From positions 124,001-188,000 of the IMG/VR virus record IMGVR_UViG_3300047499_000113: a DNA stretch of 64,000 bases; one strand, written 5' to 3'. Positions 8,299 through 63,314 of this stretch are shown piece after piece. Below the pieces are notes generated by a model. The model did no database searches. It was not told where the DNA came from and saw only the letters and a program-made list of their open reading frames with translations. A program made the translations under genes and the position numbers. Within the stretch, counting starts at the first letter, position 1. Every line of letters starts with the position of its first letter.

Positions 8299-8363
8299 TT
8301 GGGTCTCAGTATGCGTCTGCGTTTCCGCACACTCTACTGAGTGAAGGGTCCCAAATGCACAGA

Positions 8364-9716: not shown

Positions 9717-10316
9717 TCAGGTCACCGTGAACACGTTGCTGAGCTTCGAATTGCTCTGGACCTGAACCATCCAGCCCGCCACGACTGGCCCACCCGTCAC
9801 CAGTGTGTTCGGCAGGACGATCGATGCGGCTGCGATGGTGCCGCCGCCTCCAGTGATGGCGGTGTCCTTGATCGTCTGCTTGGCACCGCTGAGGTTCGTC
9901 AGGATGACGTAGGTGTGGTCCGGCGTGAGCGACAGGAACGTCGCACCCGAGGCAGGACCCGAAATCGTGGTGTCGCCCACCGGCGTGTTGTGCACAGCGC
10001 CCGTGATCGAAGGACCGGCCGAAAGTCCGCCAGCGTGGGTGAAGAAGCTGACGTAGCCTTTCGCGGCGAGCTTGGTGATCACTCCGTGCGGAAGCTGCGA
10101 CTGGAGCCTGACCTCGTCCGATGGAACGAGGTCGAGATAGCCCGGCACAGTCGGATCGATGGGGTTGACGTACGGGACATAGACCGCCTGCTTCGGCGTC
10201 TGCGCGTACGTGAGATCGGTCTCGAACTGGCCCGAGGTCCGGTCGATCTTGTCGAGCAGGATGTCTCGCGGCAGCACCTGCGAGTTGATGACCCTGACGT
10301 ATGCCGGCGTTTGCAT
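9717..10316 (-). CDS. Probable virion structural protein
   Basis: 199 aa, AGGAG RBS, Thr/Gly/Val-rich C-terminal half, putative late motif upstream. Confidence 0.6.
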   Translation of the reverse strand: MQTPAYVRVINSQVLPRDILLDKIDRTSGQFETDLTYAQTPKQAVYVPYVNPIDPTVPGYLDLVPSDEVRLQSQLPHGVITKLAAKGYVSFFTHAGGLSAGPSITGAVHNTPVGDTTISGPASGATFLSLTPDHTYVILTNLSGAKQTIKDTAITGGGGTIAAASIVLPNTLVTGGPVVAGWMVQVQSNSKLSNVFTVT

Positions 10317-10354
10317 GCCTGTCTCCTACTTGACTGAAGTCGATAAAAGCTGCA

Positions 10355-11098
10355 TCAGTGCATCGGGTCGTTTCGCTGGGAGCCGATGAAGTTGAAGGGA
10401 ACCGAGGCGCCATTGCCACGAACGAAGAGTTGCGACACAGCCGGGTAAGTCGTCACCAGGTTCACGAAATCGCTCGAAAGTGTGGGGACTTGGAACTCCG
10501 GGCCCGTAGGCTCGAATGCCACGTACAGGATCGCACCGCCGTTGTTCTGGATCTGGACGTTGTTGACCTGGCAAGGCAGCTGGATCTCGAGTGAGCCGGA
10601 AAGAGCCCCCGCGTTCGGAGCACTTCCGCTGAGAAGGATCGGTCGATTGGGTGCAATTGGATACGGCAAGATAAGCATCCCGGACTCGGCCGTATTGGTC
10701 GTGCCGTCCAGATTGACCTGCTGAACGCGAAGCCAGAACGGCGTGGAGTCGCTCACACCCACGGTCGAGAAAACCGTGTTGACTTTGCCGCCTGTCATAT
10801 AGTCGGTCGGAGCGAACCTGAATCGCGTCAGATACGGCTGTCGACTCTGACTGAACTGCTCAGAGTCGCCCATGATGTTCTGCATGCCCTGCACGCTCGG
10901 CGAGGCATAGCCACCAGACACGGGCATGTTCTGGAACGTCGTGTATGCCCCATCGAAATTGGCAGCAACCTGAAAGTTGTACGAGGCCGCGTTCGCACGC
11001 GACTCCGGACTGGTCGGGGTCGTGGCATTCGGGCCCGACGTCAAGTTGATGTCGACCAGATTCGGGCGACGCCTATAGAGCGACAGATACCGTGCCAT
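10355..11098 (-). CDS. Probable virion structural protein
   Basis: 247 aa, co-oriented in the structural cluster, putative late motif upstream. Confidence 0.55.
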   Translation of the reverse strand: MARYLSLYRRRPNLVDINLTSGPNATTPTSPESRANAASYNFQVAANFDGAYTTFQNMPVSGGYASPSVQGMQNIMGDSEQFSQSRQPYLTRFRFAPTDYMTGGKVNTVFSTVGVSDSTPFWLRVQQVNLDGTTNTAESGMLILPYPIAPNRPILLSGSAPNAGALSGSLEIQLPCQVNNVQIQNNGGAILYVAFEPTGPEFQVPTLSSDFVNLVTTYPAVSQLFVRGNGASVPFNFIGSQRNDPMH

Positions 11099-44177: not shown

Positions 44178-45971
44178 CTACTTCTCGCCCTCACCGCCGC
44201 CGAACCTGTCGCCCTTCTTCTTGGATAGTTTCAGTCCGGCAGCCGTGGCGACCTTCTCGAGGATATCAGTCTCCTCGAGGGCTTCCTCACCAGCCTTGGT
44301 CATGACGGTGCGCAGGAATTCATTGAAGTTGGCGTCATTCGGCGTGAACATATCGCGCTTGAGCTGCGCCAAAGTCTCGTCTGCGTCGATGTTGAGCAGC
44401 TCGAGGATGAACGAAATCGGCAACGACCCCTTGTTGTAGAGGTTGAACATGAAGTCCTGCAGCTCCGAGTTGTCACGCAGCGCAAGGCGCGTGAACTGGA
44501 GCTTGGGGTAAAGCAGGACTCGGTTGCCGTAGTCGTCCTCCTCCCAAAACCCCTTCTTCTCGGCGACCGGAGCAAACAAATAATCCTCGACGAATTGCGC
44601 GAGCGTCTCGCGATACAGCAGGTACATCGTGTTCATCACGTCGAGATGAATACGCTCGCCTGAATAAGTCGACTCTCCGGTGAGCATCGACTCGGTGATG
44701 CGCAGACCGATGAACAGAAGCTTGTTGGTGATTTCGTACTCGGTTCCGAGATCGAGGAGACGGTCGCGCGAGCCGACCTCGTCCCAGTGGACCTCGAAGT
44801 TCATGATGATGCTGAAGTCGGGGTCGATGAGCGCCTGGTCGATCTGGTCGCGCAGGTTCTCGACGTCCGGCTCCGACATCTTGTCGGCCCAAATGACGCG
44901 CTTGGGCGTCATCGCGCGCGATGCAATGGACGTCTGCGCCTGGCGCAGCTTGTCCTGATAGAGCAGAGTCCGCAGGCAGCGCTCGAGAATCGAGATGCCG
45001 CGGTCGTCGTAGGATGACTTCTTGTGCGTCAGGTGATAGCAGAAGGACGAGCACAGGAAGTCGTCATAGGGCGACGTGTTGAGCGGGATGGGCTGCCCGC
45101 TCAGGAGATTCTCACGGATCTGCTCCGGGATGTCCTCGGCAATCCGTGCAGACTCATCATCGTGCTGCTCTTGCGCCTTCATGACGACGATTCGGTCCTT
45201 CTCGGACGGAATCAGTTCCATCTTGGCGCGATTGGTATACTGGAAAACCTCGAGCTTGACCTGCTCCGGTGGAAGAATCTGGAGGCGCTCCCAGCCCCGG
45301 TAATTCTTGGCGACGTGCTCTCGAATGGCCTTGACTCGCTCGGTCTCGGGCTTGAGCGACTTCTTGCGTTCAATCTTGGTCTTCGCGCGGCCGGCGTAGT
45401 CAACCTCTCCAACTTCCTCTTCCTTGACGTCCGAGATCATCTCTTCGGTGATCTCTTCAGTCAGGTCGTGGTCCTCACAGAAGATGAAGACGTTGCCGTG
45501 CAGCCAGTATTCGTGCGTGGCATCGTAGAGCGTCTGGAACAGGCGAACCCGCTTGCACATCTGCTCGTAGAAGTGCAGGATGCGCTTGTTGCGGTCCAGA
45601 TCCTTGCCTTTCGGGAGCGAAAGACGGATCTTGGACATCGGCACATCGGTGTGAAAGTCGATGGCCGCGCCGACGATGGGGTGCGTGACGTACCAGAACC
45701 GAAACAGCTCGCGCTTTTCGCGCTCGGACTGCGGCAGCTCGAGGAAGTCGGTAGAAAGCTGCGGGCTGTAGAAGGCGGAGTCCGCGTTCGATATGGCTCC
45801 GCCGCCAGCATTGCCGAAGGTACCGCCGTACGCGGCGACACGGATGGACTGCGCCTGCTCCCGGCGAGCGAGCCTCTCGAGCTTCGTCAGCTTCTGTTTG
45901 GAGCCATTCTGCTGGTCAACAGAGTTGACCGGCATCGGGGGAGTGACTCCAACTTTCGGTTTCTTCGCCAT
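44178..45971 (-). CDS. Portal protein
   Basis: 597 aa after TerL. FWY..HPIVGAAIDFH...P, RG.SIL.R....L.Y.DKLR.AQ and YP.L.F..L.L.D are patterns of large-phage portals. Confidence 0.82.
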   Translation of the reverse strand: MAKKPKVGVTPPMPVNSVDQQNGSKQKLTKLERLARREQAQSIRVAAYGGTFGNAGGGAISNADSAFYSPQLSTDFLELPQSEREKRELFRFWYVTHPIVGAAIDFHTDVPMSKIRLSLPKGKDLDRNKRILHFYEQMCKRVRLFQTLYDATHEYWLHGNVFIFCEDHDLTEEITEEMISDVKEEEVGEVDYAGRAKTKIERKKSLKPETERVKAIREHVAKNYRGWERLQILPPEQVKLEVFQYTNRAKMELIPSEKDRIVVMKAQEQHDDESARIAEDIPEQIRENLLSGQPIPLNTSPYDDFLCSSFCYHLTHKKSSYDDRGISILERCLRTLLYQDKLRQAQTSIASRAMTPKRVIWADKMSEPDVENLRDQIDQALIDPDFSIIMNFEVHWDEVGSRDRLLDLGTEYEITNKLLFIGLRITESMLTGESTYSGERIHLDVMNTMYLLYRETLAQFVEDYLFAPVAEKKGFWEEDDYGNRVLLYPKLQFTRLALRDNSELQDFMFNLYNKGSLPISFILELLNIDADETLAQLKRDMFTPNDANFNEFLRTVMTKAGEEALEETDILEKVATAAGLKLSKKKGDRFGGGEGEK

Positions 45972-46757: not shown

Positions 46758-48707
46758 TCAGCGGGGTCTTGTCCGTGGGACACGTCGCATGGACGCTCCG
46801 CCTCCGTGCATGCGGTCCCGCATCCGGTGATAGTGATGATACCCGTACGTCGGCACCCGTGACGAAGGCGCCGGGGCGAGGATCGTTCCGGCCGTCAGGA
46901 GGGACGGGTTGTCCTTGACATACTCGTTGGCAAGTGCGACCGAACGGACGAGGGCGTCCGACTGGTCGTCGTGCTTGCCCGCGATCTTTGGCGCCTCGAC
47001 GATGATGATGTTCTTTCCACCCGACGTCGACTGCAGCTCAAGCAGCTCGGAGATGAGCGGGGAATGCTTGCTGCCGTCCCACAGTTTGGTCTCGTCAGCC
47101 TGAGGAATCGGGTAGTCGTACAAGGCGAGCTGTTTGTAGTACATGCTCATCTTGAACCCGTGATACATCTGCGACGAGTCCATAGTCGAGAAGTTGCGCT
47201 GCTCGAATTGGATGAGATGGCGCTTGTGCAGCACTTGTTCGAAGATGGGGCCCGCCCACTGGTCGAACACTCCCTTGATGATGTAGAACCTTCTCGAGAG
47301 TGCGAAGAACCAATCAGCAATGGCTTCGATGTCGAGCCTCGCCTGATCCTGGAGAGTCATGGCGTACGGCACCATCGGCGACGGCAAGTGAGGATTGCAC
47401 TCCGCCCATTTCTTCTTCGGATACCACACCTCGTGGTAAGCCAGCTCTATCCTGCCCGAGTTGACACGAGTCAGAGCGATGGCGGTGCCGTCGCCCGAGA
47501 GACCGAAGTCGACGCCCGCCCAGTGGGGCTCGCGCGGAATGCCAACTTGCTTGGGCCGCAGGTCGGGAACGATGCAAGCCTGAAGGTCCCGGGCGTCCTC
47601 GATGAAACCGCGGACGCGGTCCGAGAACTGAGCGCCGTGCTCCGTCATGAAGCCAGCGGGATCCTTGGCGTACTCCTCCTCGTAGTAGCTCTTGGGAAGG
47701 TCCGGGCGGATTTCCCACGTCGGCGCCTGGATCATGAGCATGTTGCGCGACTCGGGTCCGCCCGTCAGGCTCATCTCGTACTGCTTGTAGAAGAAACCCT
47801 CTCGCGCGTCGGGCGACGAGATGAGAATCATGCGGCCTTCGGTATCACCGACCGCCTTGCGGGTCTTCTTGTCCTTCTTGGCGAACTGCGCGATGGAGGG
47901 CTTGATGGCCTTGTACACGCGTTCGGCCGAGCTTTTGCCGTTGTCGACGAAGAATGCGATCTCGTCGAGAATTGCGCAAATGATACCACGACCGCGGAGA
48001 CCCTTGGCGATGGATGATTTGAACGTCGCCGTAATGGTGCCCTTGCCCTCAGGGCCGAACTTCTTGCGGTCATTTTCCGTTCGGAAGCGCAAGAACGTTT
48101 GCGTGTCGTGCGCCACTGACGACTTGAAGTAGTCGATGGCCTGGATGTGGCCCTGGATGTCGTTGTAGACGATCGACGCCTGCTCTTTGTCGTTCGCGAT
48201 GTCGAGGATACGAATTTCGGAGCCCGGCGGCATGCCGTAGTAAGCCTGCGGGTGCCCGCGCTTGAGGAGCTTGTACAGCTCGTACGCCGCGAAGACGGCC
48301 GAGAGCGCGCTCTTACCAGAACGGCGGCCGAGGATGAGGACCAGCTCGCGGCGCTCTCTCCCGTCCTGCTCGCGGATGTTGCATCGCTTGTTGTCGAACA
48401 GGTACTGAAGGTATTCCTTCTCGGTCAGTTCGAGCTTGATCGCGTCGCCGTACCTGTCGGTGATCTTGATGCACTTCTCGGTGTCGTCGAGCGGGATGTT
48501 GTAGTACAGCTTGATGATGAAGCGCTGCGCGGGGAAAAGCCCGTCCGGGAAGAGCTTGAACCGGTCGATGAATTCGAGAATATTGAGGAACTCAACATCG
48601 CCTTCAGTGTCCGACTTCTGCTGACTGCCTTGCTTCCGCTTCCTGGCGATGAAGCCAGACACCTCTGCAGTCAGCTCGCTCTTGAATACAGGCTCGCGCG
48701 TCGGCAT
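46758..48707 (-). CDS. terL: Terminase large subunit
   Basis: Walker A LGRRSGKS, Walker B ILDEIAFF, motif III ISSP, RNase H-like GVDFG...HDDQSDA. Confidence 0.93.
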   Translation of the reverse strand: MPTREPVFKSELTAEVSGFIARKRKQGSQQKSDTEGDVEFLNILEFIDRFKLFPDGLFPAQRFIIKLYYNIPLDDTEKCIKITDRYGDAIKLELTEKEYLQYLFDNKRCNIREQDGRERRELVLILGRRSGKSALSAVFAAYELYKLLKRGHPQAYYGMPPGSEIRILDIANDKEQASIVYNDIQGHIQAIDYFKSSVAHDTQTFLRFRTENDRKKFGPEGKGTITATFKSSIAKGLRGRGIICAILDEIAFFVDNGKSSAERVYKAIKPSIAQFAKKDKKTRKAVGDTEGRMILISSPDAREGFFYKQYEMSLTGGPESRNMLMIQAPTWEIRPDLPKSYYEEEYAKDPAGFMTEHGAQFSDRVRGFIEDARDLQACIVPDLRPKQVGIPREPHWAGVDFGLSGDGTAIALTRVNSGRIELAYHEVWYPKKKWAECNPHLPSPMVPYAMTLQDQARLDIEAIADWFFALSRRFYIIKGVFDQWAGPIFEQVLHKRHLIQFEQRNFSTMDSSQMYHGFKMSMYYKQLALYDYPIPQADETKLWDGSKHSPLISELLELQSTSGGKNIIIVEAPKIAGKHDDQSDALVRSVALANEYVKDNPSLLTAGTILAPAPSSRVPTYGYHHYHRMRDRMHGGGASMRRVPRTRPR

Positions 48708-48709
48708 GA

Positions 48710-49309
48710 TTACACCGCTTCCGAAATGCGCTTCTCCCACTCGGCCATGTCAGCCTCTATCTGTCGAAAGACCAGGTCGATGTCGTTGTCGGCAACGCCG
48801 GCTTTCTGCATGGCCTCGTGAATGAACTCGAGCCATTGGTGGATGACCTTCTTGAACTCCGGGCTCCTGAAGTCCATCCGCTCTTGGCGGTTGTTCTCCT
48901 GGCGCTTGAGAAGCACATCGGCCAGGTTCCGGAGCATGGAGATGCGGGCGATAGTGTGCTGGACGGTGGGCTTGCCCTCCTTGGTAGCCTTGCGACGTTC
49001 GAATTTGAGGTGGGCGAGTTCTTCAGTGATCTCCTGGATGGCCAGTTCGATCATCTCGCCAGTGGCGCCACGGCGCGTAGCCGCTTGCACCAGTTCCTGG
49101 CGCCTGACGTAGTCCTCGCGCTCCCGAAGCTCCTGCTCGGCTGCTTTCGGGTCGATGACTTCCGGGGTCGGAACGTTCCCGCTCGGGCCGACGATGACCC
49201 CGCTCATGCCGATTTCGCCGGTGTTGATCTTCTTCCCACCGGGGAGGACGAGAAGTTTGCCTTTAGGCTCGTCCTTCTTGTCTTTGTCCTTGTCCTCGGT
49301 GTCGTCCAT
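48710..49309 (-). CDS. Probable terminase small subunit
   Basis: 199-aa helical protein abutting TerL; assigned by position only. Confidence 0.5.
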   Translation of the reverse strand: MDDTEDKDKDKKDEPKGKLLVLPGGKKINTGEIGMSGVIVGPSGNVPTPEVIDPKAAEQELREREDYVRRQELVQAATRRGATGEMIELAIQEITEELAHLKFERRKATKEGKPTVQHTIARISMLRNLADVLLKRQENNRQERMDFRSPEFKKVIHQWLEFIHEAMQKAGVADNDIDLVFRQIEADMAEWEKRISEAV

Positions 49310-55577: not shown

Positions 55578-55601
55578 CGCCAAGGAGCGACCATGGGAAG
55601 C

Positions 55602-55817
55602 CTACCAAATGTCTCGGCCGCTCATCGACGGAGCGTCGAACACCTCGGAATAGAAGCGCTCGAGGTCGTGAAGAAACCCTCGAGTGGCGCGGTTGAGAGA
55701 TCGCCGGTATCGGCGGTTGGCGATCCTTTTGTCTTGGCGTTTGGAAAGGATGCTGTAGTTCACCCAGCGACGAGCCCGTTTGCAGCTGTACTGCACAGCA
55801 GGTAGGACGGTGATCAT
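55602..55817 (-). CDS. Small Arg-rich protein
   Basis: 71 aa, AGGAGG RBS, SKRQDKRIANRRYRR, ends RDIW. Confidence 0.65.
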   Translation of the reverse strand: MITVLPAVQYSCKRARRWVNYSILSKRQDKRIANRRYRRSLNRATRGFLHDLERFYSEVFDAPSMSGRDIW

Positions 55818-55873
55818 GGTCAGAACCTCCTAAAGTCCTGACATGATCGCCTCCTTTCGCGCGTCGAAGTGCA

Positions 55874-56329
55874 TCAGCTCTCCATTACCTCAAAGACTTC
55901 TTCGTGAACTTGTCTCAAAAGAAGGCCCTTGCAGGCCCAGGTCCCGAACTTCTTCCACTTCGGCCGGTGCGTGTAGCCATGCATCCAGCGTTTCTTGGCG
56001 TTGAACGGAACCTCTATGCTCTTGACAGTAATGCAAAGATGTTTCGGACTCACCTCAACGGTCAACTTCCCGTGCCGATGGCTCGTGCCGCGGTTCACAG
56101 CTATCAGGTCGAATGTGATTTCGACGGCACCAGGCAAGTAATTGCTGCTGAGGGTGCCTGGCTGAACTTGGAAATATCGAGAAAGATAGAACGCCCCAAT
56201 CACAGACACGATGGATGGACGAGCCCACTCGCAAGCCGCAGGCAATTCCTTTGGTAGCAGGTCCGCAGGCTGGAGCACTTGCTCCGTCATCTGCTGAGCC
56301 TCATCCACTGTGAAAAGGTGGGTCTTCAC
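55874..56329 (-). CDS. Hypothetical protein with C-terminal tag (HEEVFEVMES)
   Basis: 151 aa, AT-richer than its flanks. Confidence 0.65.
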   Translation of the reverse strand: MKTHLFTVDEAQQMTEQVLQPADLLPKELPAACEWARPSIVSVIGAFYLSRYFQVQPGTLSSNYLPGAVEITFDLIAVNRGTSHRHGKLTVEVSPKHLCITVKSIEVPFNAKKRWMHGYTHRPKWKKFGTWACKGLLLRQVHEEVFEVMES

Positions 56330-56369
56330 GCCGCTATTCTTGGGGTCAAGTTGCCGCTATTCTTGGGGT
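56330..56369. repeat. 17-bp direct repeat gccgctattcttggggt x2
   Basis: Copies at 56330-56346 and 56353-56369, directly upstream of the 56329 start. Confidence 0.85.
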
Positions 56370-56510
56370 ATTAGGTCGCTCCCGCAGCCTGAGCCCGGGA
56401 ATAGAGAGTCGTAACGACTCTTAGCAACATCCCTTTGGATTGATGTCGTCATCGCGGCTTCACGTGCACGGTGCCTCGGGACAGTGAGATTACACCGTCG
56501 TCGGGCAGAC

Positions 56511-56702
56511 CTACGATTCGTGGACTTGGCGGGCGACGCGAACGATGTATTCTTCCGTAGGTGGCGGGCCTGCGAGTGGTCCCATCCTCGCACCGCACCT
56601 CTTGCAGACGCGGACGAGCGCGGCCATCGAAGGGTTGCCGGACTTGCGGCGCTCCGTTTTGGGGAGCTTCTGCCACTCGTGGCCAAAGTTACGCGCCGTC
56701 AC
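56511..56702 (-). CDS. Small zinc-finger-like protein with C-terminal tag (VRVARQVHES)
   Basis: GTG 56702 with GGGGAG RBS; 63 aa, HEW...CKRCG. Confidence 0.6.
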   Translation of the reverse strand: MTARNFGHEWQKLPKTERRKSGNPSMAALVRVCKRCGARMGPLAGPPPTEEYIVRVARQVHES

Positions 56703-57591
56703 TGGGTAGCTCCCCGGCAAGCACTCGTTCGAACCGTTCCCGATTGTAGTTGATGGCAATGAAAGTGCTCGAGTCGTCTGATAGGCGACTGCCCCACTCA
56801 CCCTTATCTCGGTAGAGCTGGACTCGAGCAAATTCGCAGATTCCGGGATCGATGGTGGACATGGCGGCGAGTGGGTCGTGGAACGCTTTGCCTTTCGGGT
56901 TTTTCCCAAGATATTTCGCCATCCCTTCTCGCATGAGAGCAAAGCCCGGGTTCGGATTCTCGACTCGCATCATGCGCTCGTGTGTCGCCGGATCGTAGAT
57001 GACGCCGTGGCACACGTTCTTGGAGACCAGGTGTCGCTTGAGCACAGACGGGCTCTCGAGCACGTGTTTGGCCGCCGGGACGTCGCCGTTGAGGTTGTAA
57101 GTCGCACACGTCTCTCGGCCACGGAACTTCTCGAGTCTGTACTGCTCAGGCACGACGCTATCGCCGGCGAAACCGCCTTGAATGAACATGCTCGGAATGA
57201 TGACGCCGGCGCCGAGCGCCGCCGAGATGTTGCTCAAAGCCGCTCCCGTGATGACTGTCGTGTTGGGGTGACTGTGGAAGACGTCCTGCAGCACGCAGGA
57301 TCCGGTCCCATCAGGAGACTTGGGAGGGATAGGCCCAAGCCAGTCGTAATGGAAGCTCGAGACGCAGTCCTTCGGATGGTTCGGGCGCGCGGAACCAATA
57401 GAGGTGTTCTTGTGATCGAGCCGGTCGAGAACGTACCGGACAAGTCCAACCTGCGCTCTCGAACCTGGAGTGACAGTCACCGCGCGCAGAATGACCCCGG
57501 GATGCGTGCACAGCAGGCACAGAGCCATCACATCATCAGGGTCACTTGTTTCCATATCAAAAGCTATGTTCAAGCGCATCGGAAACTCCAA
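56689..57591 (-). CDS. Nucleoside hydrolase (IU-NH family)
   Basis: N-terminal FDMETSDPDDVMAL (DxDxxxDD-like), TGAALSN, YNLNGD and FHDPLAA. Confidence 0.85.
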   Translation of the reverse strand: MEFPMRLNIAFDMETSDPDDVMALCLLCTHPGVILRAVTVTPGSRAQVGLVRYVLDRLDHKNTSIGSARPNHPKDCVSSFHYDWLGPIPPKSPDGTGSCVLQDVFHSHPNTTVITGAALSNISAALGAGVIIPSMFIQGGFAGDSVVPEQYRLEKFRGRETCATYNLNGDVPAAKHVLESPSVLKRHLVSKNVCHGVIYDPATHERMMRVENPNPGFALMREGMAKYLGKNPKGKAFHDPLAAMSTIDPGICEFARVQLYRDKGEWGSRLSDDSSTFIAINYNRERFERVLAGELPSDGA

Positions 57592-57614: not shown

Positions 57615-57866
57615 ATGCCCAACTACCAGATCGAAATGCTCTGGCGCTGCGTTTGCAACGCCAAACAAGTCAACAAGGGCTTGTCCCGGCATTGCAGTAG
57701 TTGTGGGCGTCCGAAGGGCCCCGACATGGAGGAGTTCTTCCCGGATGATATAAGTATCCGGGCTGCCCTCCGGCGTGGAAATCTTGCCGTAGTCACTCGA
57801 TGGGGACGATTGCAGCGTCGCCGCGGTCACGAAACTGCGGAAGTGACACTTCGTGCAGGATGTTGA
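57615..57866 (+). CDS. Short zinc-ribbon ORF, possibly a truncated gene remnant
   Basis: IEMLWRCVC...NKG..RHCSSCGRP. TACAAT 6 nt before the ATG. The 3' end overlaps the convergent sigma-like gene. Confidence 0.4.
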   Translation: MPNYQIEMLWRCVCNAKQVNKGLSRHCSSCGRPKGPDMEEFFPDDISIRAALRRGNLAVVTRWGRLQRRRGHETAEVTLRAGC

Positions 57867-58566
57867 AGTGCTTGTCCGAAATGGCGAAGAACACGGTCCA
57901 ATACTTGCCGTACTTGGAGTTCTTGACCGCGTCCTCGAGTTCGTGCTCGGCCGCTTCGACTTCGTCCTGAGAACGACCCTGCTTGCGCATCATCTGCACT
58001 TGGACCTGCTTCTCGCGAGCCTCCTCGGCGATGAGGTCCTTAATGCGTTGAAGAGCGCGGAAGAAACGATGACGGACCCGGCCTTGGGTCAGGTTCATCT
58101 GCTTGGCGATCTCTGACTGGCATGTAGTCTCGTACATGCGCCAGAGAATCTCCCTGTCCTGATCACAGAACTTGGGCCCAAGTTCCAGCTCGAACAGCTC
58201 CTCGTCCAACTCGGGAATGGTGCGGAGGAATTGAATGCGCTTGATGCCGCGGTGAAGACGATAACTCACGGCCGCCTGGGTGATGCGGAACAACTTGGCT
58301 ATCTGTTCCTGCTTCATCTTGTCGTGGTGATACAGACGGATGAGATCCGCCTCGCGCGGCGGGATCCTATCCAGGTACGGCGCCACGGCGGCGAAATCGA
58401 GTGACCGGCTCTCGGCTTTCAGCTCCTCTTCGGGCTCCGGCGCGAGTTGCGCTTCGATCAGCTCGTCGAGGTCTTGTTCGGTGTCGGCGTCGTAGCCGAG
58501 CCTATCTTTGGTGCTGTAGCGAGAAGAGAGATTACTCGGATCCTGGATCAGGATATGGGATGACAT
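57793..58566 (-). CDS. Sigma-70 region-4-like protein with tandem HTH domains
   Basis: PPREADLIRLY...KQEQIAKLFRITQAAVSYRLHRG and DQDREIL...CQSEIAKQMNLTQGRVRHRFFRA. Confidence 0.75.
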   Translation of the reverse strand: MSSHILIQDPSNLSSRYSTKDRLGYDADTEQDLDELIEAQLAPEPEEELKAESRSLDFAAVAPYLDRIPPREADLIRLYHHDKMKQEQIAKLFRITQAAVSYRLHRGIKRIQFLRTIPELDEELFELELGPKFCDQDREILWRMYETTCQSEIAKQMNLTQGRVRHRFFRALQRIKDLIAEEAREKQVQVQMMRKQGRSQDEVEAAEHELEDAVKNSKYGKYWTVFFAISDKHFNILHEVSLPQFRDRGDAAIVPIE

Positions 58567-58583
58567 TTGGCTCCGACCGTGGC

Positions 58584-58671
58584 GACCCGTGAGGATCGGC
58601 AGTTTCCCGAGTATGCGTATTTGTCTGAGGACCCGTGCGGGTCAACGGAGTATACGTATTGGTCTGCGTAT
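58584..58671. repeat. Imperfect tandem repeat upstream of the sigma-like gene
   Basis: gagtatgcgtatttgtctg (58609-58627) and gagtatacgtattggtctg (58648-58666), each preceded by gacccgtgMggRtc. Confidence 0.7.
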
Positions 58672-58736
58672 AACGGCGGAGCCGGTGCTTCCCGGCACGC
58701 TAATGACACACTACCAGATGAATCTTTTGTCTGGAA

Positions 58737-59774
58737 TCAGATACCTTCGAGCCAGCTCTCGAGAGGCACCTGACCATCGCCAACGGCTGCCGGCGGGCGG
58801 AAGGGACCGAAGTCCAGACCCGAGATAAGTAGGTCTTCCCGACAGATGTCGACTGCCAATTGGTAGTCCTTCTTACCGGGTTGGAGGCTCGAGGAGAGGT
58901 CCAGGTCGTCCTGGAGACCCACGAGCCTCCAGTTCATCTCTATACGGGCTCGGTGCTCGAGGGTCTTGGTCCGTTCGCCGTTGCTGAAGCTGGTCAGGCC
59001 CGAGGCGAACACATCTTCCACGGTGGGAAGATGGCACACAGTCATAGCTGTCTTCTTGCGCAGTAGCGGTACGCCGGGGATGCTGTCCGAGTTGTCGCCG
59101 CAAAGCGACTTGAACATCCGCACCTGGCCGCAAGGGACCTTGGGGTGTTTCCCCTTGAGGAGTCGACCCCACACCTCGGCGGACGCCGCGGCATCAACGA
59201 ACCGTTGCTCCTTCGAGCCCGGACGGAACATCACCACACGCGGATCTGTCAGGAGTTGGAAGAAGTCCTTGTCGTCCGACACGACGATGCGGACGGAGTC
59301 CGGATGCTGCTTGCAGAAGCTGGCGATGAGGTCGTCGGCTTCCTCCGCATGATTGTGGTAGACGTCGCACCCGAGGAGTTGCAAGATATGTGACAGGACG
59401 GCGATGTCACTCTCGGCCTCGAAACCGTCGCGGAGCCGGAGTGGGATCTTGACCGTCTCTTCACCGAAGAGCTTGAGATCGTGCTTGGTGTCCTCGCGCT
59501 TGATCTTGTACGTGGGATCGAGCGCTCGCCGGCGCACGGGTGCCCCGTCGAAGAAGATGGATACAGACGTGAACGGCTGCATCTCATAGAGCCAAGAACA
59601 CAGGAACGTAAGGAACCCGTAGATGATGCCGGTCGGATACCCTTTCGGGCCACTCATCAGCGGCCTGCCATCTTTGAGACGGCCTTCGACGAAGACGTAA
59701 AATGCTCGCTGCAGGACGTTATTCCCGTCCACCACGACGTGGCGTTTGGTCTCCGCTCCTCCGATGTGCCTCAC
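58737..59774 (-). CDS. 5'-3' exonuclease/flap endonuclease (PolI N-terminal-like)
   Basis: VVVDGNN...RAF, FFDG, YK..R, EEADDLIAS, VSDDKDFFQL and LCGDNSDSIPGV. Confidence 0.93.
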   Translation of the reverse strand: MRHIGGAETKRHVVVDGNNVLQRAFYVFVEGRLKDGRPLMSGPKGYPTGIIYGFLTFLCSWLYEMQPFTSVSIFFDGAPVRRRALDPTYKIKREDTKHDLKLFGEETVKIPLRLRDGFEAESDIAVLSHILQLLGCDVYHNHAEEADDLIASFCKQHPDSVRIVVSDDKDFFQLLTDPRVVMFRPGSKEQRFVDAAASAEVWGRLLKGKHPKVPCGQVRMFKSLCGDNSDSIPGVPLLRKKTAMTVCHLPTVEDVFASGLTSFSNGERTKTLEHRARIEMNWRLVGLQDDLDLSSSLQPGKKDYQLAVDICREDLLISGLDFGPFRPPAAVGDGQVPLESWLEGI

Positions 59775-60382
59775 GTGTCGTCCTTCTGCAAATACGAGGC
59801 TGGAAAGTCCATGAAGATGCCGCCTCCCTTGATGGAGCGCAGGTTCACGAATACCTGGACTTTCTCACCGTCGTCGTAGATCATCGCGACGCGACCGGGG
59901 AGTCCCTTGTAGCTACCCTTGGTGATTTTGACGCGCTGGTCTTCCTTGAACCTCGAGGCCGTAACTTTCAGGTCCTGCATGCCGTTGCGCATGTGAGACA
60001 GGTCCTTGTCGGTCAAGAGTGAATAGACTCGCTTCTTCTCACCATTGACCGAGCTGAGACTGCTCAGCACCATGTTGAAGTAGTTGGTCTCGGCGAGTTT
60101 GTGGTAACTGACGCCAGGTTCGTACTGCACGAAGACGTAGCCTTCGGAGTACCAGGTAGTCAGAGAGTCATCAATCCCCTTCTGGTTGATGGCCGGGACG
60201 AAGACGTCCAGATCGTTTCGAGCAAGGATCTGATGAGCAGATCGAATGATCAGCTGGATATTCTTCTCCCGCTCCCCAAGGGCCGTCAGCTGCACGACCA
60301 CCCACTGAGAGACGGGTGGCGGAGCAGCGGGCGGAATCGATGCTTTCTTATTCTTGACCTTTGATCCTTTGGAGGAAGCCAC
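59771..60382 (-). CDS. NusG-like transcription elongation/antitermination factor
   Basis: NGN-like WVVVQL...VFVP...GYVFV and KOW motif FKEDQRVKITKGSYKGLPGRV. GTG 60382 has an AAGGAG RBS. Confidence 0.8.
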   Translation of the reverse strand: MASSKGSKVKNKKASIPPAAPPPVSQWVVVQLTALGEREKNIQLIIRSAHQILARNDLDVFVPAINQKGIDDSLTTWYSEGYVFVQYEPGVSYHKLAETNYFNMVLSSLSSVNGEKKRVYSLLTDKDLSHMRNGMQDLKVTASRFKEDQRVKITKGSYKGLPGRVAMIYDDGEKVQVFVNLRSIKGGGIFMDFPASYLQKDDT

Positions 60383-61769
60383 GCGCGAACTCCTTTGGCG
60401 CCATCGGATGGAGATCCTTATCCAACCGTACGTCCGGAGCGCTGGTCGGACCCGTGGCAATCGGGGCCCCACGGCTTCCTTTCTCGAGCTTGTCGTCCAC
60501 TGAGGTGAGCTTTTCGGCCGGAGTGAAGCTCACTCCGTCGATTTCGAGTGCTTTCGGCTTGACGATACGACGTGGAGGCTCCGCCTTGACCTCCGGTTTG
60601 GGCTCGGGAGCCTTCGGAGCCGGTGCAGGCTGGGGAGGGGCCTGCTGGACGGGCGCTGCCTGCGGAGGGGCAGCCTGGGGCGCCGGCGTAGGCGGCGTTG
60701 GAGGCGTTGAGAGCCGCTTCTCCCAGTCGGCCGGCAGAGGAGTGGTAGCGGCAGGAAGATTGGGGATGGCCTCAAACAAGATGGCCTCGACGTCGGCGGC
60801 GCCGGGTTTGTCGAGCTGACCGAGGGCTTTCGCCACAGCGAGCCACGCCGGTCCACGCGTCGCGTACAGCGATGCGGGCACCATCAGGGTCGGCTTCGCC
60901 CCGACACTCGCCCGCACGGCGCTGGTGACCACTTGGATCGTGGTGTCGCGCACCCAGGACGGTCCTTCTGTGTCGAGAAGCTCAGAAATAGCGCTCAGCG
61001 CCACCTTCGGGTCGGACGATAGTCCTTCGAGCGCGGCGACCAGCTTCTCTGTCGCCCCGAGCCTGAAGTATGTCCTGACGTCGTCGACTGTGATAGGCCC
61101 CGCCGACGACAGCATCTCGAGGGCAGTTAGACACGTGCGCGGGCAGTTAGACTGCGCCTGCATGATCAGCTGAAGTGCGTCGTCAGGCGCTTGAATGGAC
61201 TCGGCCTCGCAGACACGATGCAGGTGTCCAAGCAAAACGTCCACGGGCGGCGCAGAGACGGGAAACTCCGTCATCCTGTCGCGCAACGGCCCCTGGATTT
61301 TGTGAGGCTCCGTAGTGCACAGGATGACGAGCATTCGCCGATCTTCGATGCTCTTGAGGAGAGCATCTTGGGCCTGCTTCGTCAGACGCTGCGCTTCGTC
61401 TAGGATGAAAACAGACGGCTTGCCGTTGAGATTCCCGTAGTCGAGTTCCGACACGATGGTACGCATATGCTCGACCGAGCCCTGCGTAGCGGCATCGAAT
61501 TCCTCGAAACTTTCCGCGCTTTCCTGACGCACGCCGAGACATGCGTTGCATACGCCGCAGGGCTCACCGTCCTGCAAATCGTTGCAGACTACAGCGCACG
61601 CCACAATGCGCGCGAGCGAGGTTTTGCCGCAGCCCTTCGGGCCCCCGAACATCAGTGACCGCTCGCCGAGCTTTCCGCCACGACTGAGCTGATGAAGGAG
61701 CTGTACGACAGCTTTGTTCCCCAAGATATCGGCGAACTTCTTGGGTCTGTACTTGAGGTCAAGAGCCAT
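60348..61769 (-). CDS. dnaX: DNA polymerase III gamma/tau-like clamp loader subunit
   Basis: LKYRPKKFADILG, GPKGCGKTSLARI, PCGVCNAC, EFDAA, FILDEAQRL...ALLK.IE, then a Pro-rich linker. Confidence 0.9.
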   Translation of the reverse strand: MALDLKYRPKKFADILGNKAVVQLLHQLSRGGKLGERSLMFGGPKGCGKTSLARIVACAVVCNDLQDGEPCGVCNACLGVRQESAESFEEFDAATQGSVEHMRTIVSELDYGNLNGKPSVFILDEAQRLTKQAQDALLKSIEDRRMLVILCTTEPHKIQGPLRDRMTEFPVSAPPVDVLLGHLHRVCEAESIQAPDDALQLIMQAQSNCPRTCLTALEMLSSAGPITVDDVRTYFRLGATEKLVAALEGLSSDPKVALSAISELLDTEGPSWVRDTTIQVVTSAVRASVGAKPTLMVPASLYATRGPAWLAVAKALGQLDKPGAADVEAILFEAIPNLPAATTPLPADWEKRLSTPPTPPTPAPQAAPPQAAPVQQAPPQPAPAPKAPEPKPEVKAEPPRRIVKPKALEIDGVSFTPAEKLTSVDDKLEKGSRGAPIATGPTSAPDVRLDKDLHPMAPKEFARGFLQRIKGQE

Positions 61770-61790: not shown

Positions 61791-61997
61791 CTAGTTCAAC
61801 CCGTGCGGCCTCGCAGTTTGCATCGTTATGGACTGGCGCCAATAGGCTTCCGCCTCGGCTCGCTCGTTCTCACATAAGTCAGCCCAGGCTTCTTTGAGCT
61901 GCTCGTCGATGCTGTTGACCTTCGCTTCGGCGGAAGAGGGAGACAAGCCCCGTAGTTGGTCTACGAGGTCCTTGTACCGGCGAAGAGCTTCGGACAC
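61791..61997 (-). CDS. Small hypothetical protein
   Basis: 68-aa helical ORF in the operon. Confidence 0.5.
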   Translation of the reverse strand: MSEALRRYKDLVDQLRGLSPSSAEAKVNSIDEQLKEAWADLCENERAEAEAYWRQSITMQTARPHGLN

Positions 61998-61998: not shown

Positions 61999-62517
61999 TC
62001 ATTTGCCCTTTAGACTGTCGCCGAGTGCTGCCAGGTCTGTGTTCCACTTGCCGTGGCGTGCTGCAATTTCCGGGAATTCCTGCACTTGAGGTGGCCTCAA
62101 TCGGTACTTGTACTCGCCCGTGGTCTCGTCCTCGATGGCGACGCATCTGGCAAGCAGATGGTCGACCAGGGCAGTACGTTGATTCGGCTGCAAGCCGTTC
62201 CAGACATCGAGGGCGACCGTCAGTACGTAGTCAGCACCTTCATCTCCGGCCTTTTGAGCGAGGTGCTTTTCGGTGGGATTGGCCTTCCGGATAGTGCCCG
62301 GAACGGGAGTGCCTGCCGCTTTGGACGCACGATTGCGGCACAAGCAGAGGATGTGAGCGTTCACAAGCTCGTGGTAATACTTCGGCACGAGCTTTTGAAC
62401 TATCTCGAAGACCGACTCCGAGTCCGCGATGATGAGCGGTTCGGGGGCCGCCTTTTGCTTCTTGTCCCGTACGGCGTCGTTCTCATTGGATCGTTCTGCA
62501 GTTTGCACGGTCACCAT
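61999..62517 (-). CDS. Phage metallopeptidase-like protein with degenerate zincin motif
   Basis: DY.L....D.W..L...QR.ALVDHLLARC...PQVQEF.EI..RHG.W matches the putative phage metallopeptidase pattern, but HExxH reads HLLAR. Confidence 0.65.
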   Translation of the reverse strand: MVTVQTAERSNENDAVRDKKQKAAPEPLIIADSESVFEIVQKLVPKYYHELVNAHILCLCRNRASKAAGTPVPGTIRKANPTEKHLAQKAGDEGADYVLTVALDVWNGLQPNQRTALVDHLLARCVAIEDETTGEYKYRLRPPQVQEFPEIAARHGKWNTDLAALGDSLKGK

Positions 62518-63314
62518 CAGATCACTCCCGCGAGTGCCCGTTTGAAGTGAGCCCGGAACCGGTCGTCGCCGACTCGTTTCCAGTAGTCACCCGGGTCTTT
62601 GTCCTTGGGTTGTAGGCAGGGATATTTTACGTTTAAGACCTCGAATTCGTTGCTGAATCGCTCGGTGAAGCCAGTGACACCTTTCCTGCCTGCTTCATCC
62701 ATATCGAGAATGAGGACAATTCGACGGGCGAACCTCCGCAAGAAGCGCAATTGAGATTTGCTGACACCGCTGGTCGTAAGTCCAAGGATGTTCGGAGCGA
62801 TAAGTCGCTCGCAGATCTGATGGTCACCGGGCCCTTCCACAAGAATTGCAGTCCGCGTCGACCAAACCGCAGCTATGTTGGCGGGATTGCAGAAGAAGAA
62901 ACCCTCGGGTCTGCGATGCAGAGCGAACGTGTCGTATTCTTTGCGGTCCAAGTGGCGAATTTGGAAGCCAACATGGACACCCGAATACGAAGTCAGCGGG
63001 AAAACTACGCTGCCGCGAATGCGACGCCCTTGGAATTGCGTCTTCGGGCCGTTTTCTTCCACAGCCTCCCACGTCGAAGACCAGTTCCGGAAGTGGCACG
63101 AATCGCACCACAGGTGCTTCTTCTCGCGGTCAGAGCACTGCGCTCCATGGCCGCGATCTAATGACGAGTCCACCGCATAATCCTCGGCGGTGTAGCCGAG
63201 GCGATGCTCGAACATCTGCGCTTCCGAAATCCCGCGGCCCTGGAGATAGCTCTTGGCATCATCGGACTGCATCAATCCGTGGTATGCCCAGTCCAGAAAT
63301 GCGTCGACATCCAT
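62517..63314 (-). CDS. DnaG-like primase (TOPRIM)
   Basis: AKSYLQGRGI...RLGY, VVFPL...GFQIR, ILVEGPGD, LILDMDEAGRKG and KDPGDY. Confidence 0.88.
   Translation of the reverse strand: MDVDAFLDWAYHGLMQSDDAKSYLQGRGISEAQMFEHRLGYTAEDYAVDSSLDRGHGAQCSDREKKHLWCDSCHFRNWSSTWEAVEENGPKTQFQGRRIRGSVVFPLTSYSGVHVGFQIRHLDRKEYDTFALHRRPEGFFFCNPANIAAVWSTRTAILVEGPGDHQICERLIAPNILGLTTSGVSKSQLRFLRRFARRIVLILDMDEAGRKGVTGFTERFSNEFEVLNVKYPCLQPKDKDPGDYWKRVGDDRFRAHFKRALAGVI

What the first reader, a model, noticed from the sequence alone, without database searches (positions are those of the whole stretch)
57793..60382. Phage NusG paralog and tandem-sigma4 protein at the replication/late boundary
Seen: an NGN+KOW protein, and a protein with two region-4-like HTHs but no obvious sigma region 2, just upstream of the long late cluster. 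Established: specialised NusG paralogs (RfaH, LoaP, TaA) antiterminate long operons. Inference: a two-factor module reprogramming host RNAP for late transcription, including processivity through genes such as the >6-kb collagen.
Basis: partly seen in the sequence, partly recalled or inferred. Interest (0 to 1): 0.6.

Follow-up and report, generated by a model that had tools for sequence, protein, structure and literature searches.

The report
Huge-phage NusG paralog plus double-sigma4 protein
A roughly 430-kb uncultivated phage with no RNA polymerase genes found in its complete relatives carries a divergent NusG-type elongation factor and a sigma-derived protein made of two promoter-binding (region 4) domains but no DNA-melting domain, kept together in all its relatives, so they probably retool the host polymerase, though how is not yet shown.

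Summary
Window 59771-60382 (-) encodes a 203-aa NGN+KOW protein. Its predicted fold matches NusG, RfaH and Spt5 at probability 1.0. Window 57793-58566 (-) encodes a 257-aa protein with two duplicated sigma region-4 helix-turn-helix domains and no region 2. A flap endonuclease gene lies between them.

The window comes from a 240-kb fragment (about 56% complete) of a huge phage from a moss metagenome. The order clamp loader, NusG-like, FEN, double-sigma4, then terminase and portal is kept in all 54 related viral loci. In a distant 485-kb phage the two genes overlap.

Three complete relatives (393-436 kb) gave no RNA polymerase hits. They add an RpoD-like sigma and a 221-aa protein in which only region 2 is recognisable.

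Best reading: both factors act on the host polymerase. The double-sigma4 protein would be a promoter-specificity or co-activator subunit, like T4 gp33 or a "minimal sigma". The NusG paralog would be an elongation or anti-termination factor. The late-gene target and the processivity role are untested.

By-products: a structured leader that hides the double-sigma4 ribosome-binding site, a recurrent GGTARNGT -10-like motif, and strand-specific NNAKAC hexamer arrays.

This is a new variant of known kinds.

The parts
59771..60382 (-). NusG/Spt5-family paralog, 203 aa. It has a Lys-rich disordered N-terminal tail (1-25), an NGN domain (26-124), a linker helix (125-144) and a KOW barrel (150-200). 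Its GTG start overlaps the clamp-loader stop by 35 nt, and its stop overlaps the FEN start by 4 nt.
58737..59774 (-). 5'-3' exonuclease / flap endonuclease, 345 aa. It lies between the two transcription-factor genes in this clade and is absent from that position in LR745208.1.
   Evidence: Pfam 5_3_exonuc_N 7.7e-26; phrog_107
57793..58566 (-). Double-sigma4 protein, 257 aa. It has a conserved N-terminal peptide (HILIQDPSNLSSRFS), sigma4 domain 1 (58-116), sigma4 domain 2 (122-~180), a long helix/coiled-coil (161-215), and a C-terminal peptide (FNILHEVSLPQFRDRG) in which most positions are invariant and which is predicted to be disordered.
58567..58736 (-). Leader of the double-sigma4 gene. It holds the -10-like motif TGGTAGTGT (58708-58716) and a 5' anti-SD arm GGCTCCGCCG (58674-58683) that pairs with the SD region CGGTCGGAGCC (58569-58579). 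NNAKAC hexamer arrays lie at 58650-58671 and 58611-58626, on either side of a hairpin (58630-58643).
60348..61769 (-). DnaX-like clamp loader, 473 aa, immediately upstream and overlapping the NusG-like gene. This is a conserved neighbour.
   Evidence: Pfam DNA_pol3_delta2 3.3e-20; phrog_5846 1.4e-47
46758..48740 (-). Terminase large subunit. It marks the start of the recognisable head and packaging genes downstream on the same strand.
   Evidence: phrog_2 3.3e-26
44178..45971 (-). Portal protein.
   Evidence: phrog_16240 2e-26

Best explanation
The two genes are conserved core genes of a clade of about 390-490-kb phages in whose complete genomes no RNA polymerase gene was found. Such phages must use the host enzyme.

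The 203-aa protein is a divergent, phage-specific member of the NusG/Spt5 family. By inference from that family, its NGN domain docks on the beta' clamp helices of the elongating host RNAP, where it would suppress pausing and termination on phage DNA. Its KOW domain is available for a second partner. It is made from the replication-gene operon (clamp loader, NusG-like, FEN, with overlapping stops and starts).

The 257-aa protein is a sigma derivative built from a duplicated region-4 helix-turn-helix. It has no region 2, so it cannot melt a promoter by itself. Most likely it acts as a promoter-specificity or co-activator subunit. One region-4 module would occupy the beta-flap as sigma4, T4 gp33 and the 'minimal sigma' of other RNAP-less jumbo phages do. 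The invariant recognition helices would read DNA. A partner carrying region 2 would be needed: either the 221-aa protein in which only region 2 is recognised, found in complete relatives, or an RpoD-like or host sigma. Its conserved N- and C-terminal peptides would dock on still-unknown partners.

Its translation is gated by a leader RNA that sequesters the Shine-Dalgarno sequence.

What is shown: the folds and domains, the lack of region 2, the conserved synteny, the absence of RNAP hits in relatives, and the leader covariation. What is inferred: RNAP binding, antitermination, partner identity, and timing.
For: NusG-family fold and full-length model alignment. Viral-only clusters of similar NusG-like proteins.

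Two sigma4 domains and no sigma2, seen in the query and in more than 500 homologs. Both recognition helices are invariant (ITQAAVSYRL and LTQGRVRHRF) even in relatives of 31-45% identity.

The double-sigma4 protein is the best-conserved gene of the block. Its mean identity is 67.7%, against 41-48% for most neighbouring genes (g89 58%) and 60.6% for terminase.

The gene order is kept in 54 of 54 loci. The two genes overlap in LR745208.1.

There are no Pfam beta or beta' hits in three complete DTR-bounded relatives, while controls ring.

The complementary family in which only region 2 is recognised matches TIGR02937 positions 11-86. Its listed homologs (271 found, the best 120 listed) carry no precomputed Pfam sigma4 hit. 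It is present in 3 of 3 complete relatives.

Literature: RNAP-less jumbo phages are reported to encode minimal single-HTH sigmas, RpoD-like sigmas and gp33 orthologs (PMC7824862).

Leader: the anti-SD:SD helix is present in 28 of 31 leaders with covarying flanks. Own-versus-cross pairing is -17.8 against -12.3 kcal/mol, with 0 of 5000 permutations reaching the observed value.
Against: No direct evidence of RNAP contact exists. The single complex prediction (tail against phage clamp) gave no verdict.

The NusG-like protein scores far below every curated NusG, RfaH, LoaP and UpxY cut-off.

The C-terminal third of the sigma2 protein may be a degenerate sigma4. That would make it a complete sigma and leave the double-sigma4 protein without a needed partner role. 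hhalign found no sigma4 there, but its sensitivity is low.

The window's own 240-kb fragment lacks both the RpoD-like and the sigma2 genes, so these are known only from relatives.

Highly divergent phiKZ-type polymerases could escape Pfam. The T7-type RNAP search had no positive control.

No conserved -35-like element was seen upstream of the recurrent GGTARNGT motif, so the DNA target of the two helix-turn-helix domains is unknown.
Confidence: 0.5

Rival explanations
1. The double-sigma4 protein is a free-standing DNA-binding regulator. It would be a pseudo-dimeric repressor or activator of the GerE/LuxR or KorA type that uses two HTHs on two half-sites and never becomes part of RNAP. Its neighbourhood with the NusG-like gene would reflect co-expression only.
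For: Both recognition helices are invariant and basic. Structural matches include the DNA-bound regulators KorA, NarL and DosR at Z 6-8. Its own leader carries repeated short elements that could be operators.
Against: The best sequence and fold matches are ECF sigma region 4, including helix 4.1. The repeats have a 6-nt period and are strictly strand-specific, which fits RNA better than a double-stranded operator. Its conservation is higher than that of terminase.
Confidence: 0.22
2. The double-sigma4 protein is a sigma decoy or appropriator. It would occupy the beta-flap, or bind host sigma or anti-sigma partners, to shut off -35-dependent host promoters. RNAP would then be left for -10-only phage promoters (functionally like T4 AsiA or P23-45 gp39), without reading DNA itself.
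For: It lacks sigma2. The recurrent phage motif GGTARNGT looks like a -10-only promoter with no conserved -35. The terminal peptides are conserved and disordered, as is typical of docking motifs.
Against: Invariant DNA-recognition helices are not needed for a pure decoy. There is no similarity to known appropriators.
Confidence: 0.1
3. The NusG-like protein serves replication rather than late transcription, given that it sits in the replication operon. It might resolve transcription-replication conflicts or couple RNAP to the replisome or clamp, as T4 couples late transcription to the sliding clamp.
For: It is invariably placed between the clamp loader and FEN, with overlapping stop and start codons. 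A beta-clamp-like gene lies just upstream (G000:189140-190273; phrog_947 9e-6).
Against: No NusG-family member is known to work in replication (established knowledge). In LR745208.1 it is instead fused in an operon with the sigma4 gene, without FEN. The clamp-tail prediction gave no verdict.
Confidence: 0.08
4. The double-sigma4 protein is a small-terminase-like protein that recognises DNA for packaging: an HTH, an oligomerising helix and a C-terminal tail for the large terminase.
For: The architecture of HTH, long helices and a conserved tail fits. There is a weak fold match to the phage G20C small terminase (Z 5.7). The gene lies upstream of terL.
Against: Six conserved genes separate it from terL, and a 199-aa ORF directly abuts terL. 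All family-level hits are sigma factors.
Confidence: 0.03

Closest known systems
NusG/Spt5 family and its specialised paralogs (RfaH, LoaP, UpxY, TaA, ActX)
   Same: It has the NGN + KOW architecture and a full-length alignment to nusG, with the conserved WxVxQ...GxE and GYxFV NGN motifs and the KOW glycine pattern. Like ActX, LoaP and UpxY, it is carried by a mobile or accessory genome next to long gene clusters.
   Different: It scores 15-27 bits against curated cut-offs of 100-145 for nusG, RfaH, LoaP and UpxY, so it belongs to none of them. It has a Lys-rich N-terminal tail and a 20-residue inter-domain helix. The KOW is predicted as a beta-barrel, with no sign of an RfaH-type helical state. 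No recruitment signal has been identified.
Phage T4 late transcription set: gp55 (sigma2-like), gp33 (flap-binding co-activator), gp45 clamp (established knowledge; PMC7824862 for jumbo-phage orthologs)
   Same: The phage has no RNAP of its own. The sigma function appears split into a protein in which only region 2 is recognised (221 aa, in relatives) and a region-4-side protein. The genes are embedded among clamp, clamp-loader and nuclease genes. The candidate promoters are -10-only.
   Different: Here the flap-side protein is a true sigma4 by sequence, is duplicated, and keeps DNA-recognition helices. gp33 does not bind DNA. Clamp binding is not shown. A NusG paralog is part of the set, which T4 lacks.
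'Minimal sigma' of RNAP-less jumbo phages (Iyer et al. 2021, PMC7824862)
   Same: It is a phage protein consisting essentially of the sigma HTH that binds promoter DNA and the beta-flap, and it co-occurs with an RpoD-like sigma.
   Different: That class is described with a single HTH. This family has two tandem region-4 domains, a coiled-coil and two conserved terminal peptides.
Two-subunit sigma SigO-RsoA of Bacillus subtilis (own knowledge, not checked here)
   Same: Sigma regions 2 and 4 are supplied by separate polypeptides.
   Different: The phage genes are not adjacent. No interaction has been tested. The region-4 part is duplicated.
TRAP-regulated trp leaders (for the NNAKAC arrays; own knowledge)
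   Same: Short (G/U)A-type triplets recur with a 5-6-nt period in 5' leaders. They sit either directly at the start codon or beside an SD-sequestering helix.
   Different: The repeat is (U/G)AC rather than (G/U)AG, with only 3-4 units per block. No binding protein has been identified.

Membership tests
NusG/Spt5 superfamily | N-terminal NGN alpha/beta domain | tested here: met
   AF2 model residues 26-124 at pLDDT 80-96. The model as a whole matches NusG, RfaH and Spt5 in Foldseek at probability 1.0. The profile aligns to T. maritima NusG residues 3-163. The Pfam NusG (PF02357) model itself gives no hit.
NusG/Spt5 superfamily | C-terminal KOW beta-barrel | tested here: met
   Pfam KOW 21.8 bits against a 22.3 cut-off. 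Profile against the SPT5 KOW gives E 4e-8. The model has a barrel at 150-200.
Bacterial housekeeping NusG (TIGR00922 equivalog) | Score above the curated cut-off | tested here: not met
   26.6 bits against 135.7
RfaH / LoaP / UpxY specialised paralogs | Score above the curated cut-off of the family model | tested here: not met
   RfaH 15.1 against 144.5; LoaP 22.1 against 125; UpxY 24.4 against 100
RfaH / LoaP / UpxY specialised paralogs | Specific recruitment element (ops DNA or leader RNA hairpin) at the head of target operons | tested here: inconclusive
   GGTARNGT matches the ops core GGTAGnnT and sits in leaders. However, three copies lie exactly 6 nt before an ATG, as a -10 for leaderless mRNA would. 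The promoter reading is therefore preferred.
RfaH | All-helical autoinhibited C-terminal domain (fold switch) | tested here: not met
   AF2 predicts a beta-barrel KOW at pLDDT ~90. This is a prediction only.
NusG/Spt5 superfamily | Binding to the RNAP beta' clamp helices | not testable with these tools
Sigma-70 family | Region 2 (core binding, -10 recognition, melting) | tested here: not met
   There is no PF04542 hit in the protein. The only weak genomic hit is antisense inside a 1616-aa ORF. The N-terminal 57 residues are low-confidence or disordered.
Sigma-70 family | Region 4 HTH (-35 recognition, beta-flap binding) | tested here: met
   It is present twice: PF04545 at 34.9 and 31.0 bits, with structural matches Z 8-9.6 and rmsd 1.2-2.9 A to sigma4 domains.
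T4 gp33-type late co-activator | C-terminal tail that binds the sliding clamp | tested here: inconclusive
   A conserved disordered tail exists. Co-folding with the phage clamp-like protein returned 'no answer'.
Split (two-subunit) sigma | A separate protein in the same genome in which only region 2 is recognised | tested here: inconclusive
   It is present in 3 of 3 complete relatives, as a family of 271 homologs in which the 120 listed carry no Pfam sigma4 hit. It is not in the window's 56%-complete fragment. Its C-terminal third could be a degenerate sigma4.

The most novel reading that the evidence does not exclude
The NusG paralog and the double-sigma4 protein together replace a sigma factor. 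The NGN domain would take the sigma2 site on the beta' clamp helices and read the non-template strand of the ops-like, -10-like GGTAGnGT motif. The double-sigma4 protein would take the beta-flap. Initiation and termination-resistant elongation would then be set up by one bipartite phage factor. This would explain several observations together: why a region-4-only protein and a NusG paralog are kept adjacent (even overlapping) across deep divergence, why the promoter motif coincides with the RfaH ops core, and why no -35 element is seen.
Probability: 0.05. Interest if true: 0.9.

Novelty: new variant of a known kind. Interest (0 to 1): 0.55.

Why it matters
Huge phages without their own polymerase must reprogram the host enzyme across hundreds of kilobases and through genes of 5-7 kb. 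How they do this is largely unknown. This clade offers a compact and extremely conserved toolkit: a double region-4 protein, a protein in which only region 2 is recognised, an RpoD-like sigma and a NusG paralog. The toolkit looks like an independent, sigma-derived counterpart of the T4 gp33/gp55 system. If the region-4 protein docks on the flap and the NusG paralog on the clamp helices, the system would show how sigma modules can be split, duplicated and combined with an elongation factor. It would also supply new tools for orthogonal control of bacterial RNAP. The leader RNA and the hexamer arrays add a translational layer that can be tested directly.

Tried and rejected
1. Co-folding of the phage beta-clamp-like protein (two copies) with residues 200-257 of the double-sigma4 protein returned 'no answer' (score 0.01, controls not run). 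This is neither support nor evidence against binding.

2. The weak Sigma70_r2 hit at G000:16476-16577 (+) lies antisense inside a 1616-aa minus-strand ORF and is spurious.

3. An 8-mer enrichment scan of intergenic DNA gave no dominant motif.

4. GCTTCTTTT was considered as a general late promoter and rejected. It is conserved only 12-22 nt upstream of the g304 homolog. In this window it is degenerate and not enriched upstream of genes.

5. The ops reading of GGTARNGT was considered. The exact 9-mer is not enriched in the window, and the 6-nt spacing to ATG in three cases favours a -10 element.

6. Rfam gave no family for the leader. RNAalifold on the MAFFT alignment recovered only the CUCC:GGAG core because the flanks were misaligned, so covariation was counted by script instead.

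7. hhalign of the sigma2 family against the double-sigma4 family found no sigma4 in the former. The only hit is a non-significant resemblance (probability below 1%) between its region 2.3/2.4 and the C-terminal motif of the double-sigma4 protein.

8. Host inference failed. Homologs sit in MAGs labelled Lentisphaeria, Methylobacter and Lysinibacter, which are probably mis-binned phage contigs.

9. No RNA runs hold the locus; only moss-metagenome DNA runs do.

10. The family scans and word searches had already placed both proteins.

11. The T7-type RNAP search found nothing but had no positive control.
Full report
**Where the window comes from**

The window is bases 124001-188000 of a 240,015-bp IMG/VR virus record that CheckV rates as 56% complete. 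Relatives carrying the same genes reach 393-445 kb. Three of them have direct terminal repeats and are rated 100% complete. The DNA is held in moss-metagenome sequencing runs only, and none of those is RNA. GC content is about 60%. The host is unknown: homologs occur in MAGs labelled Lentisphaeria, Methylobacter and Lysinibacter, an inconsistent set that points to mis-binned phage contigs.

**Check of the observation**

The minus strand of the window's right end encodes the following genes in transcription order:

| Coordinates | Product |
|---|---|
| 62517-63314 | Toprim/DnaG-like primase |
| 61999-62517 | phage metallopeptidase |
| 61791-61997 | 68-aa ORF |
| 60348-61769 | DnaX-like clamp loader |
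| 59771-60382 | NusG-like protein |
| 58737-59774 | 5'-3' exonuclease / FEN |
| 57793-58566 | double-sigma4 protein |
| 56689-57591 | nucleoside hydrolase |

Several unknown genes follow, then the terminase large subunit (46758-48740) and portal (44178-45971). Two corrections apply. A FEN gene separates the two genes. The collagen-like gene (window 2-5935; Pfam Collagen 911 bits) is about 50 kb away, with plus-strand ORFs in between on a crude ORF map, and has its own leader.

**The NusG-like protein**

The GTG start at 60382 is supported by a conserved N-terminus (MASSKGSK) in 38 homologs of 45-93% identity.

The sequence evidence is as follows:
- It aligns over its whole length to NCBIfam nusG (E 4.7e-6), and more weakly to UpxY, LoaP and RfaH. 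All these scores are far below the curated cut-offs.
- PHROGs places it in phrog_6386, 'transcription antiterminator'.
- A profile of the family hits SPT5 KOW domains (E 4e-8) and T. maritima NusG over residues 3-163.

The AF2 model (pLDDT 82) shows a disordered Lys-rich tail, an NGN-type domain, a 20-residue helix and a KOW barrel. Its best 30+ PDB matches are NusG, RfaH and Spt5 at probability 1.0. The ESM Atlas lists several clusters of similar proteins that are 91-100% viral.

It is thus a divergent, phage-specific branch of the NusG family. It is not a member of any curated specialised-paralog family.

**The double-sigma4 protein**

Pfam finds two Sigma70_r4 stretches and no region 2. NCBIfam sigma70-ECF is matched only over its region-4 part, positions 81-162.

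The AF2 model (pLDDT 75, pTM 0.67) has these parts:
- a poorly ordered N-terminus;
- two three-helix HTH domains (58-116 and 122-~180);
- a long helix (161-195) and two further helices;
- a disordered C-terminal tail.

Foldseek and VIA-align find only single sigma region-4 domains, with Z up to 9.6 and rmsd 1.2-2.9 A. The two domains are 38% identical to each other (E 4e-6), which indicates an internal duplication.

The family has more than 500 clusters at 90% identity, and the nearest Atlas clusters of sigma4 proteins are 96-100% viral.

Several elements are conserved even in relatives of 31-45% identity:
- both recognition helices (ITQAAVSYRL and LTQGRVRHRF);
- an N-terminal peptide (I-x-DP-x-x-L-x-x-RF);
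- a C-terminal peptide (FNIL[HR]E[VI]xLP[QK][FW]).

It is the best-conserved gene of the block. Its mean identity is 67.7%, against 41-48% for most neighbouring genes (g89 58%) and 60.6% for terminase.

**Conservation of the pair**

All 54 related IMG/VR loci keep the order primase, metallopeptidase, clamp loader, NusG-like, FEN, double-sigma4, a variable insert, then g304, g89, g450 and onward to terminase and portal. In the 485-kb uncultured phage LR745208.1 the FEN gene is absent from this position. There the NusG-like gene (L056:9261-9884) overlaps the double-sigma4 gene (9869-10462) by 16 nt, directly after an enlarged (628-aa) clamp loader that seems to hold an intein.

**What else the clade encodes**

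Three complete relatives and LR745208.1 give no Pfam hit to RNAP beta' (PF00623) or beta (PF00562), while all 14 control genomes ring. A T7-type RNAP search also found nothing but had no positive control.

Each complete relative carries:
- a ~400-aa RpoD-like sigma with regions 1.2, 2, 3 and 4;
- a 219-229-aa protein that matches sigma models only over region 2 (TIGR02937 positions 11-86 to 11-101);
- the double-sigma4 protein;
- a ~500-550-aa ORF with a weak sigma4-like stretch. This ORF is also present in the window's genome at G000:206982-208514.

The family in which only region 2 is recognised has 271 homologs. None of the 120 listed has a precomputed sigma4 Pfam hit. Profile comparison found no sigma4 in its conserved C-terminal third, although by eye that part could be a degenerate HTH. 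The window's own fragment lacks the RpoD-like gene and this sigma2 gene, presumably because 44% of the genome is missing.

A beta-clamp-like gene lies just outside the window (G000:189140-190273; phrog_947 9e-6, full length).

**How it most likely works**

The following is shown:
- the folds and domains;
- the lack of region 2;
- the synteny;
- the absence of RNAP hits;
- the complement of sigma-related genes.

The rest is inferred from what is established for these families. NGN domains bind the beta' clamp helices and make RNAP resistant to pausing and termination. Sigma region 4 binds the beta-flap tip helix and -35 DNA. T4 splits sigma function between gp55 and gp33. On that basis, the NusG paralog would modify elongating host RNAP on phage DNA. 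The double-sigma4 protein would be a flap-side promoter-specificity or co-activator subunit that needs a partner carrying region 2. Iyer et al. (PMC7824862) describe 'minimal' single-HTH sigmas, RpoD-like sigmas and gp33 orthologs in RNAP-less jumbo phages. The present protein is a duplicated, extended variant of that theme.

I put about 0.5 on this general model. The rivals are a free-standing regulator (0.22), a sigma decoy (0.10), a replication-linked role for the NusG-like protein (0.08) and a small-terminase-like protein (0.03).

The test of a T4-like clamp contact gave no verdict.

**Cis-elements found on the way**

1. *The leader.* The 170-nt leader of the double-sigma4 gene is conserved in architecture across the closer clade.
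   - A GGTARNGT motif (window 58708-58716) lies 96-168 nt upstream of the ATG in 32 of 36 leaders.
   - A 5' CUCC-containing arm pairs with the Shine-Dalgarno region in 28 of 31 leaders, and the flanking pairs covary.
   - Each SD arm pairs best or second best with its own 5' arm in 20 of 31 cases. The mean own pairing is -17.8 kcal/mol against -12.3 for cross pairs, and 0 of 5000 permutations reach the observed value.
   - The minimum-free-energy fold of the window's leader contains this helix.
   - Rfam has no match.

2. *The hexamer arrays.* Two arrays of NNAKAC hexamers with a 6-nt period flank a central hairpin in this leader.
   - Triple arrays occur 6 times in the 240-kb genome against 0.07 expected, all on the gene strand.
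   - Across G000, G001 and G003 there are 16 copies on one strand and none on the other, against 1 for the reversed control pattern.
   - In 589 kb of close-clade loci the count is 18 on the gene strand and 0 on the other. There are none in 246 kb of distant-clade loci.
   - Outside the double-sigma4 leader they end 2-4 nt before the start codons of an actin-fold-like gene (a guess from its N-terminal motif), an 812-aa gene, and the 80-aa DUF5659 gene that heads the run containing the collagen-like gene. They also occur in the leader of a 1939-aa gene.
   - Their period, strand bias and position recall TRAP-type RNA operators.

3. *GGTANNGT as a candidate promoter.* It is about 7-fold enriched in intergenic DNA: 8 of 29 copies lie in 5% of the genome, while the reversed control is not enriched.
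   - All eight intergenic copies point toward the next ORF. Three lie exactly 6 nt before an ATG, as a -10 element for leaderless mRNA would.
   - It matches the RfaH ops core (GGTAGnnT), which is worth noting beside a NusG paralog. The promoter reading is nevertheless more economical.
   - No conserved -35 was seen.

**Novelty and verdict**

Phage NusG-like proteins already have a PHROG, and minimal phage sigmas are described. Neither gene is therefore a new kind. Four things are new:
- the tandem region-4 architecture with conserved docking peptides;
- its fixed partnership with a NusG paralog across a large clade of huge phages;
- the complementary family in which only region 2 is recognised;
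- the translational leader.

Noticed in passing
window 58567-58736 (-): The double-sigma4 gene has a structured leader. A 5' arm (58674-58683) pairs with the Shine-Dalgarno region (58569-58579). The pairing covaries in 28 of 31 related leaders, and 0 of 5000 permutations reach the observed own-arm pairing energy. There is no Rfam match. This is probably a translational switch.
   Followed up: yes
window 58611-58626, 58650-58671, 8303-8318; G000:96664-96679, 114351-114366, 92650-92740: Strand-specific arrays of NNAKAC hexamers with a 6-nt period lie in 5' leaders, several ending 2-4 nt before the ATG. There are 6 in G000 against 0.07 expected, and 16 against 1 (control) across three genomes. 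They are absent from the distant clade. The binding factor is unknown; the arrangement resembles TRAP operators.
   Followed up: partly
window 58708-58716; G000:17652, 18359, 31827, 56711, 114407, 199094, 221410: A GGTARNGT motif is about 7-fold enriched in intergenic DNA and points toward the next ORF. Three copies lie exactly 6 nt before an ATG (before genes of 82, 1789 and 861 aa). It is a candidate -10-only promoter, partly for leaderless mRNAs, and it coincides with the RfaH ops core GGTAGnnT.
   Followed up: partly
L002:12753, L003:11580, L006:12675 and about 15 further loci; window ~55590-55600 (degenerate): A conserved rGCTTCTT(T/G)T element lies 12-22 nt upstream of the start codon of the g304 homolog in most relatives. 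No Shine-Dalgarno sequence is evident there. It is specific to that gene and is not a general motif.
   Followed up: partly
G000:C1:189140-190273 (-), about 1.1 kb beyond the window's right end: A 377-aa beta-sliding-clamp-like protein lies upstream of the primase and clamp-loader run (phrog_947 'DNA polymerase processivity factor' 9e-6, full length; weak Pfam DNA_pol3_beta_3).
   Followed up: partly
relatives: L061:1183-1848 (-), L062:1369-2028 (+); L057:1051-2253 (+): Complete relatives encode a 219-229-aa protein with only sigma region 2 recognisable (271 homologs found; none of the 120 listed has a Pfam sigma4 hit) and a 400-aa RpoD-like sigma. Both are missing from the window's 56%-complete fragment.
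   Followed up: yes
G000:C1:206982-208514 (-): A ~510-aa ORF carries a weak sigma4-like stretch (TIGR02937 positions 97-163, E 9e-4). Its orthologs in G001-G003 (503-550 aa) score better. This is a fourth sigma-related gene of the clade.
   Followed up: no
window 35526-38330 (-); L056:7451-9337: The 934-aa gene has a phrog_2774 match and a weak head-maturation-protease PHROG match, and it carries an intein with a LAGLIDADG homing endonuclease (Pfam LAGLIDADG_3 1.4e-13, Intein_splicing, Hom_end_hint). The clamp loader of LR745208.1 is enlarged (628 against 473 aa) and seems to hold an intein too; this was judged by eye only.
   Followed up: no
window 56689-57591 (-) and 55600-56700: A nucleoside hydrolase (Pfam IU_nuc_hydro 1.3e-13) and small ORFs occupy a variable slot between the double-sigma4 gene and g304. 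In relatives this slot ranges from about 40 nt to about 5.5 kb.
   Followed up: partly
window 2-5935 (-) = G000:123048-129935: A collagen-like giant gene (2295 aa in the genome) gives Pfam Collagen 911 bits in 11 stretches. It is followed on the same strand by a 1567-aa ORF. The run is headed by an 80-aa DUF5659 gene that has a terminator-like hairpin, GTAGAGT and an AKAC array upstream (window ~8300-8390).
   Followed up: partly
P0001 residues 215-239 versus the sigma2 family (A6 columns 108-130): The invariant C-terminal motif of the double-sigma4 protein (SKYGKYWTVFFAISDKHFNILHE) came up twice as the only, non-significant, hhalign match to region 2.3/2.4 (RKSSFGHYVYMVANNVCINLVHR) of the phage sigma2 protein (probability below 1%). 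This is unexplained and probably chance.
   Followed up: partly
L064, L065, L066: Homologs of the double-sigma4 protein sit in MAGs labelled Lentisphaeria, Methylobacter and Lysinibacter. The contigs (5.7-127 kb) are probably phage DNA binned with bacteria, so these labels should not be used as host calls.
   Followed up: no
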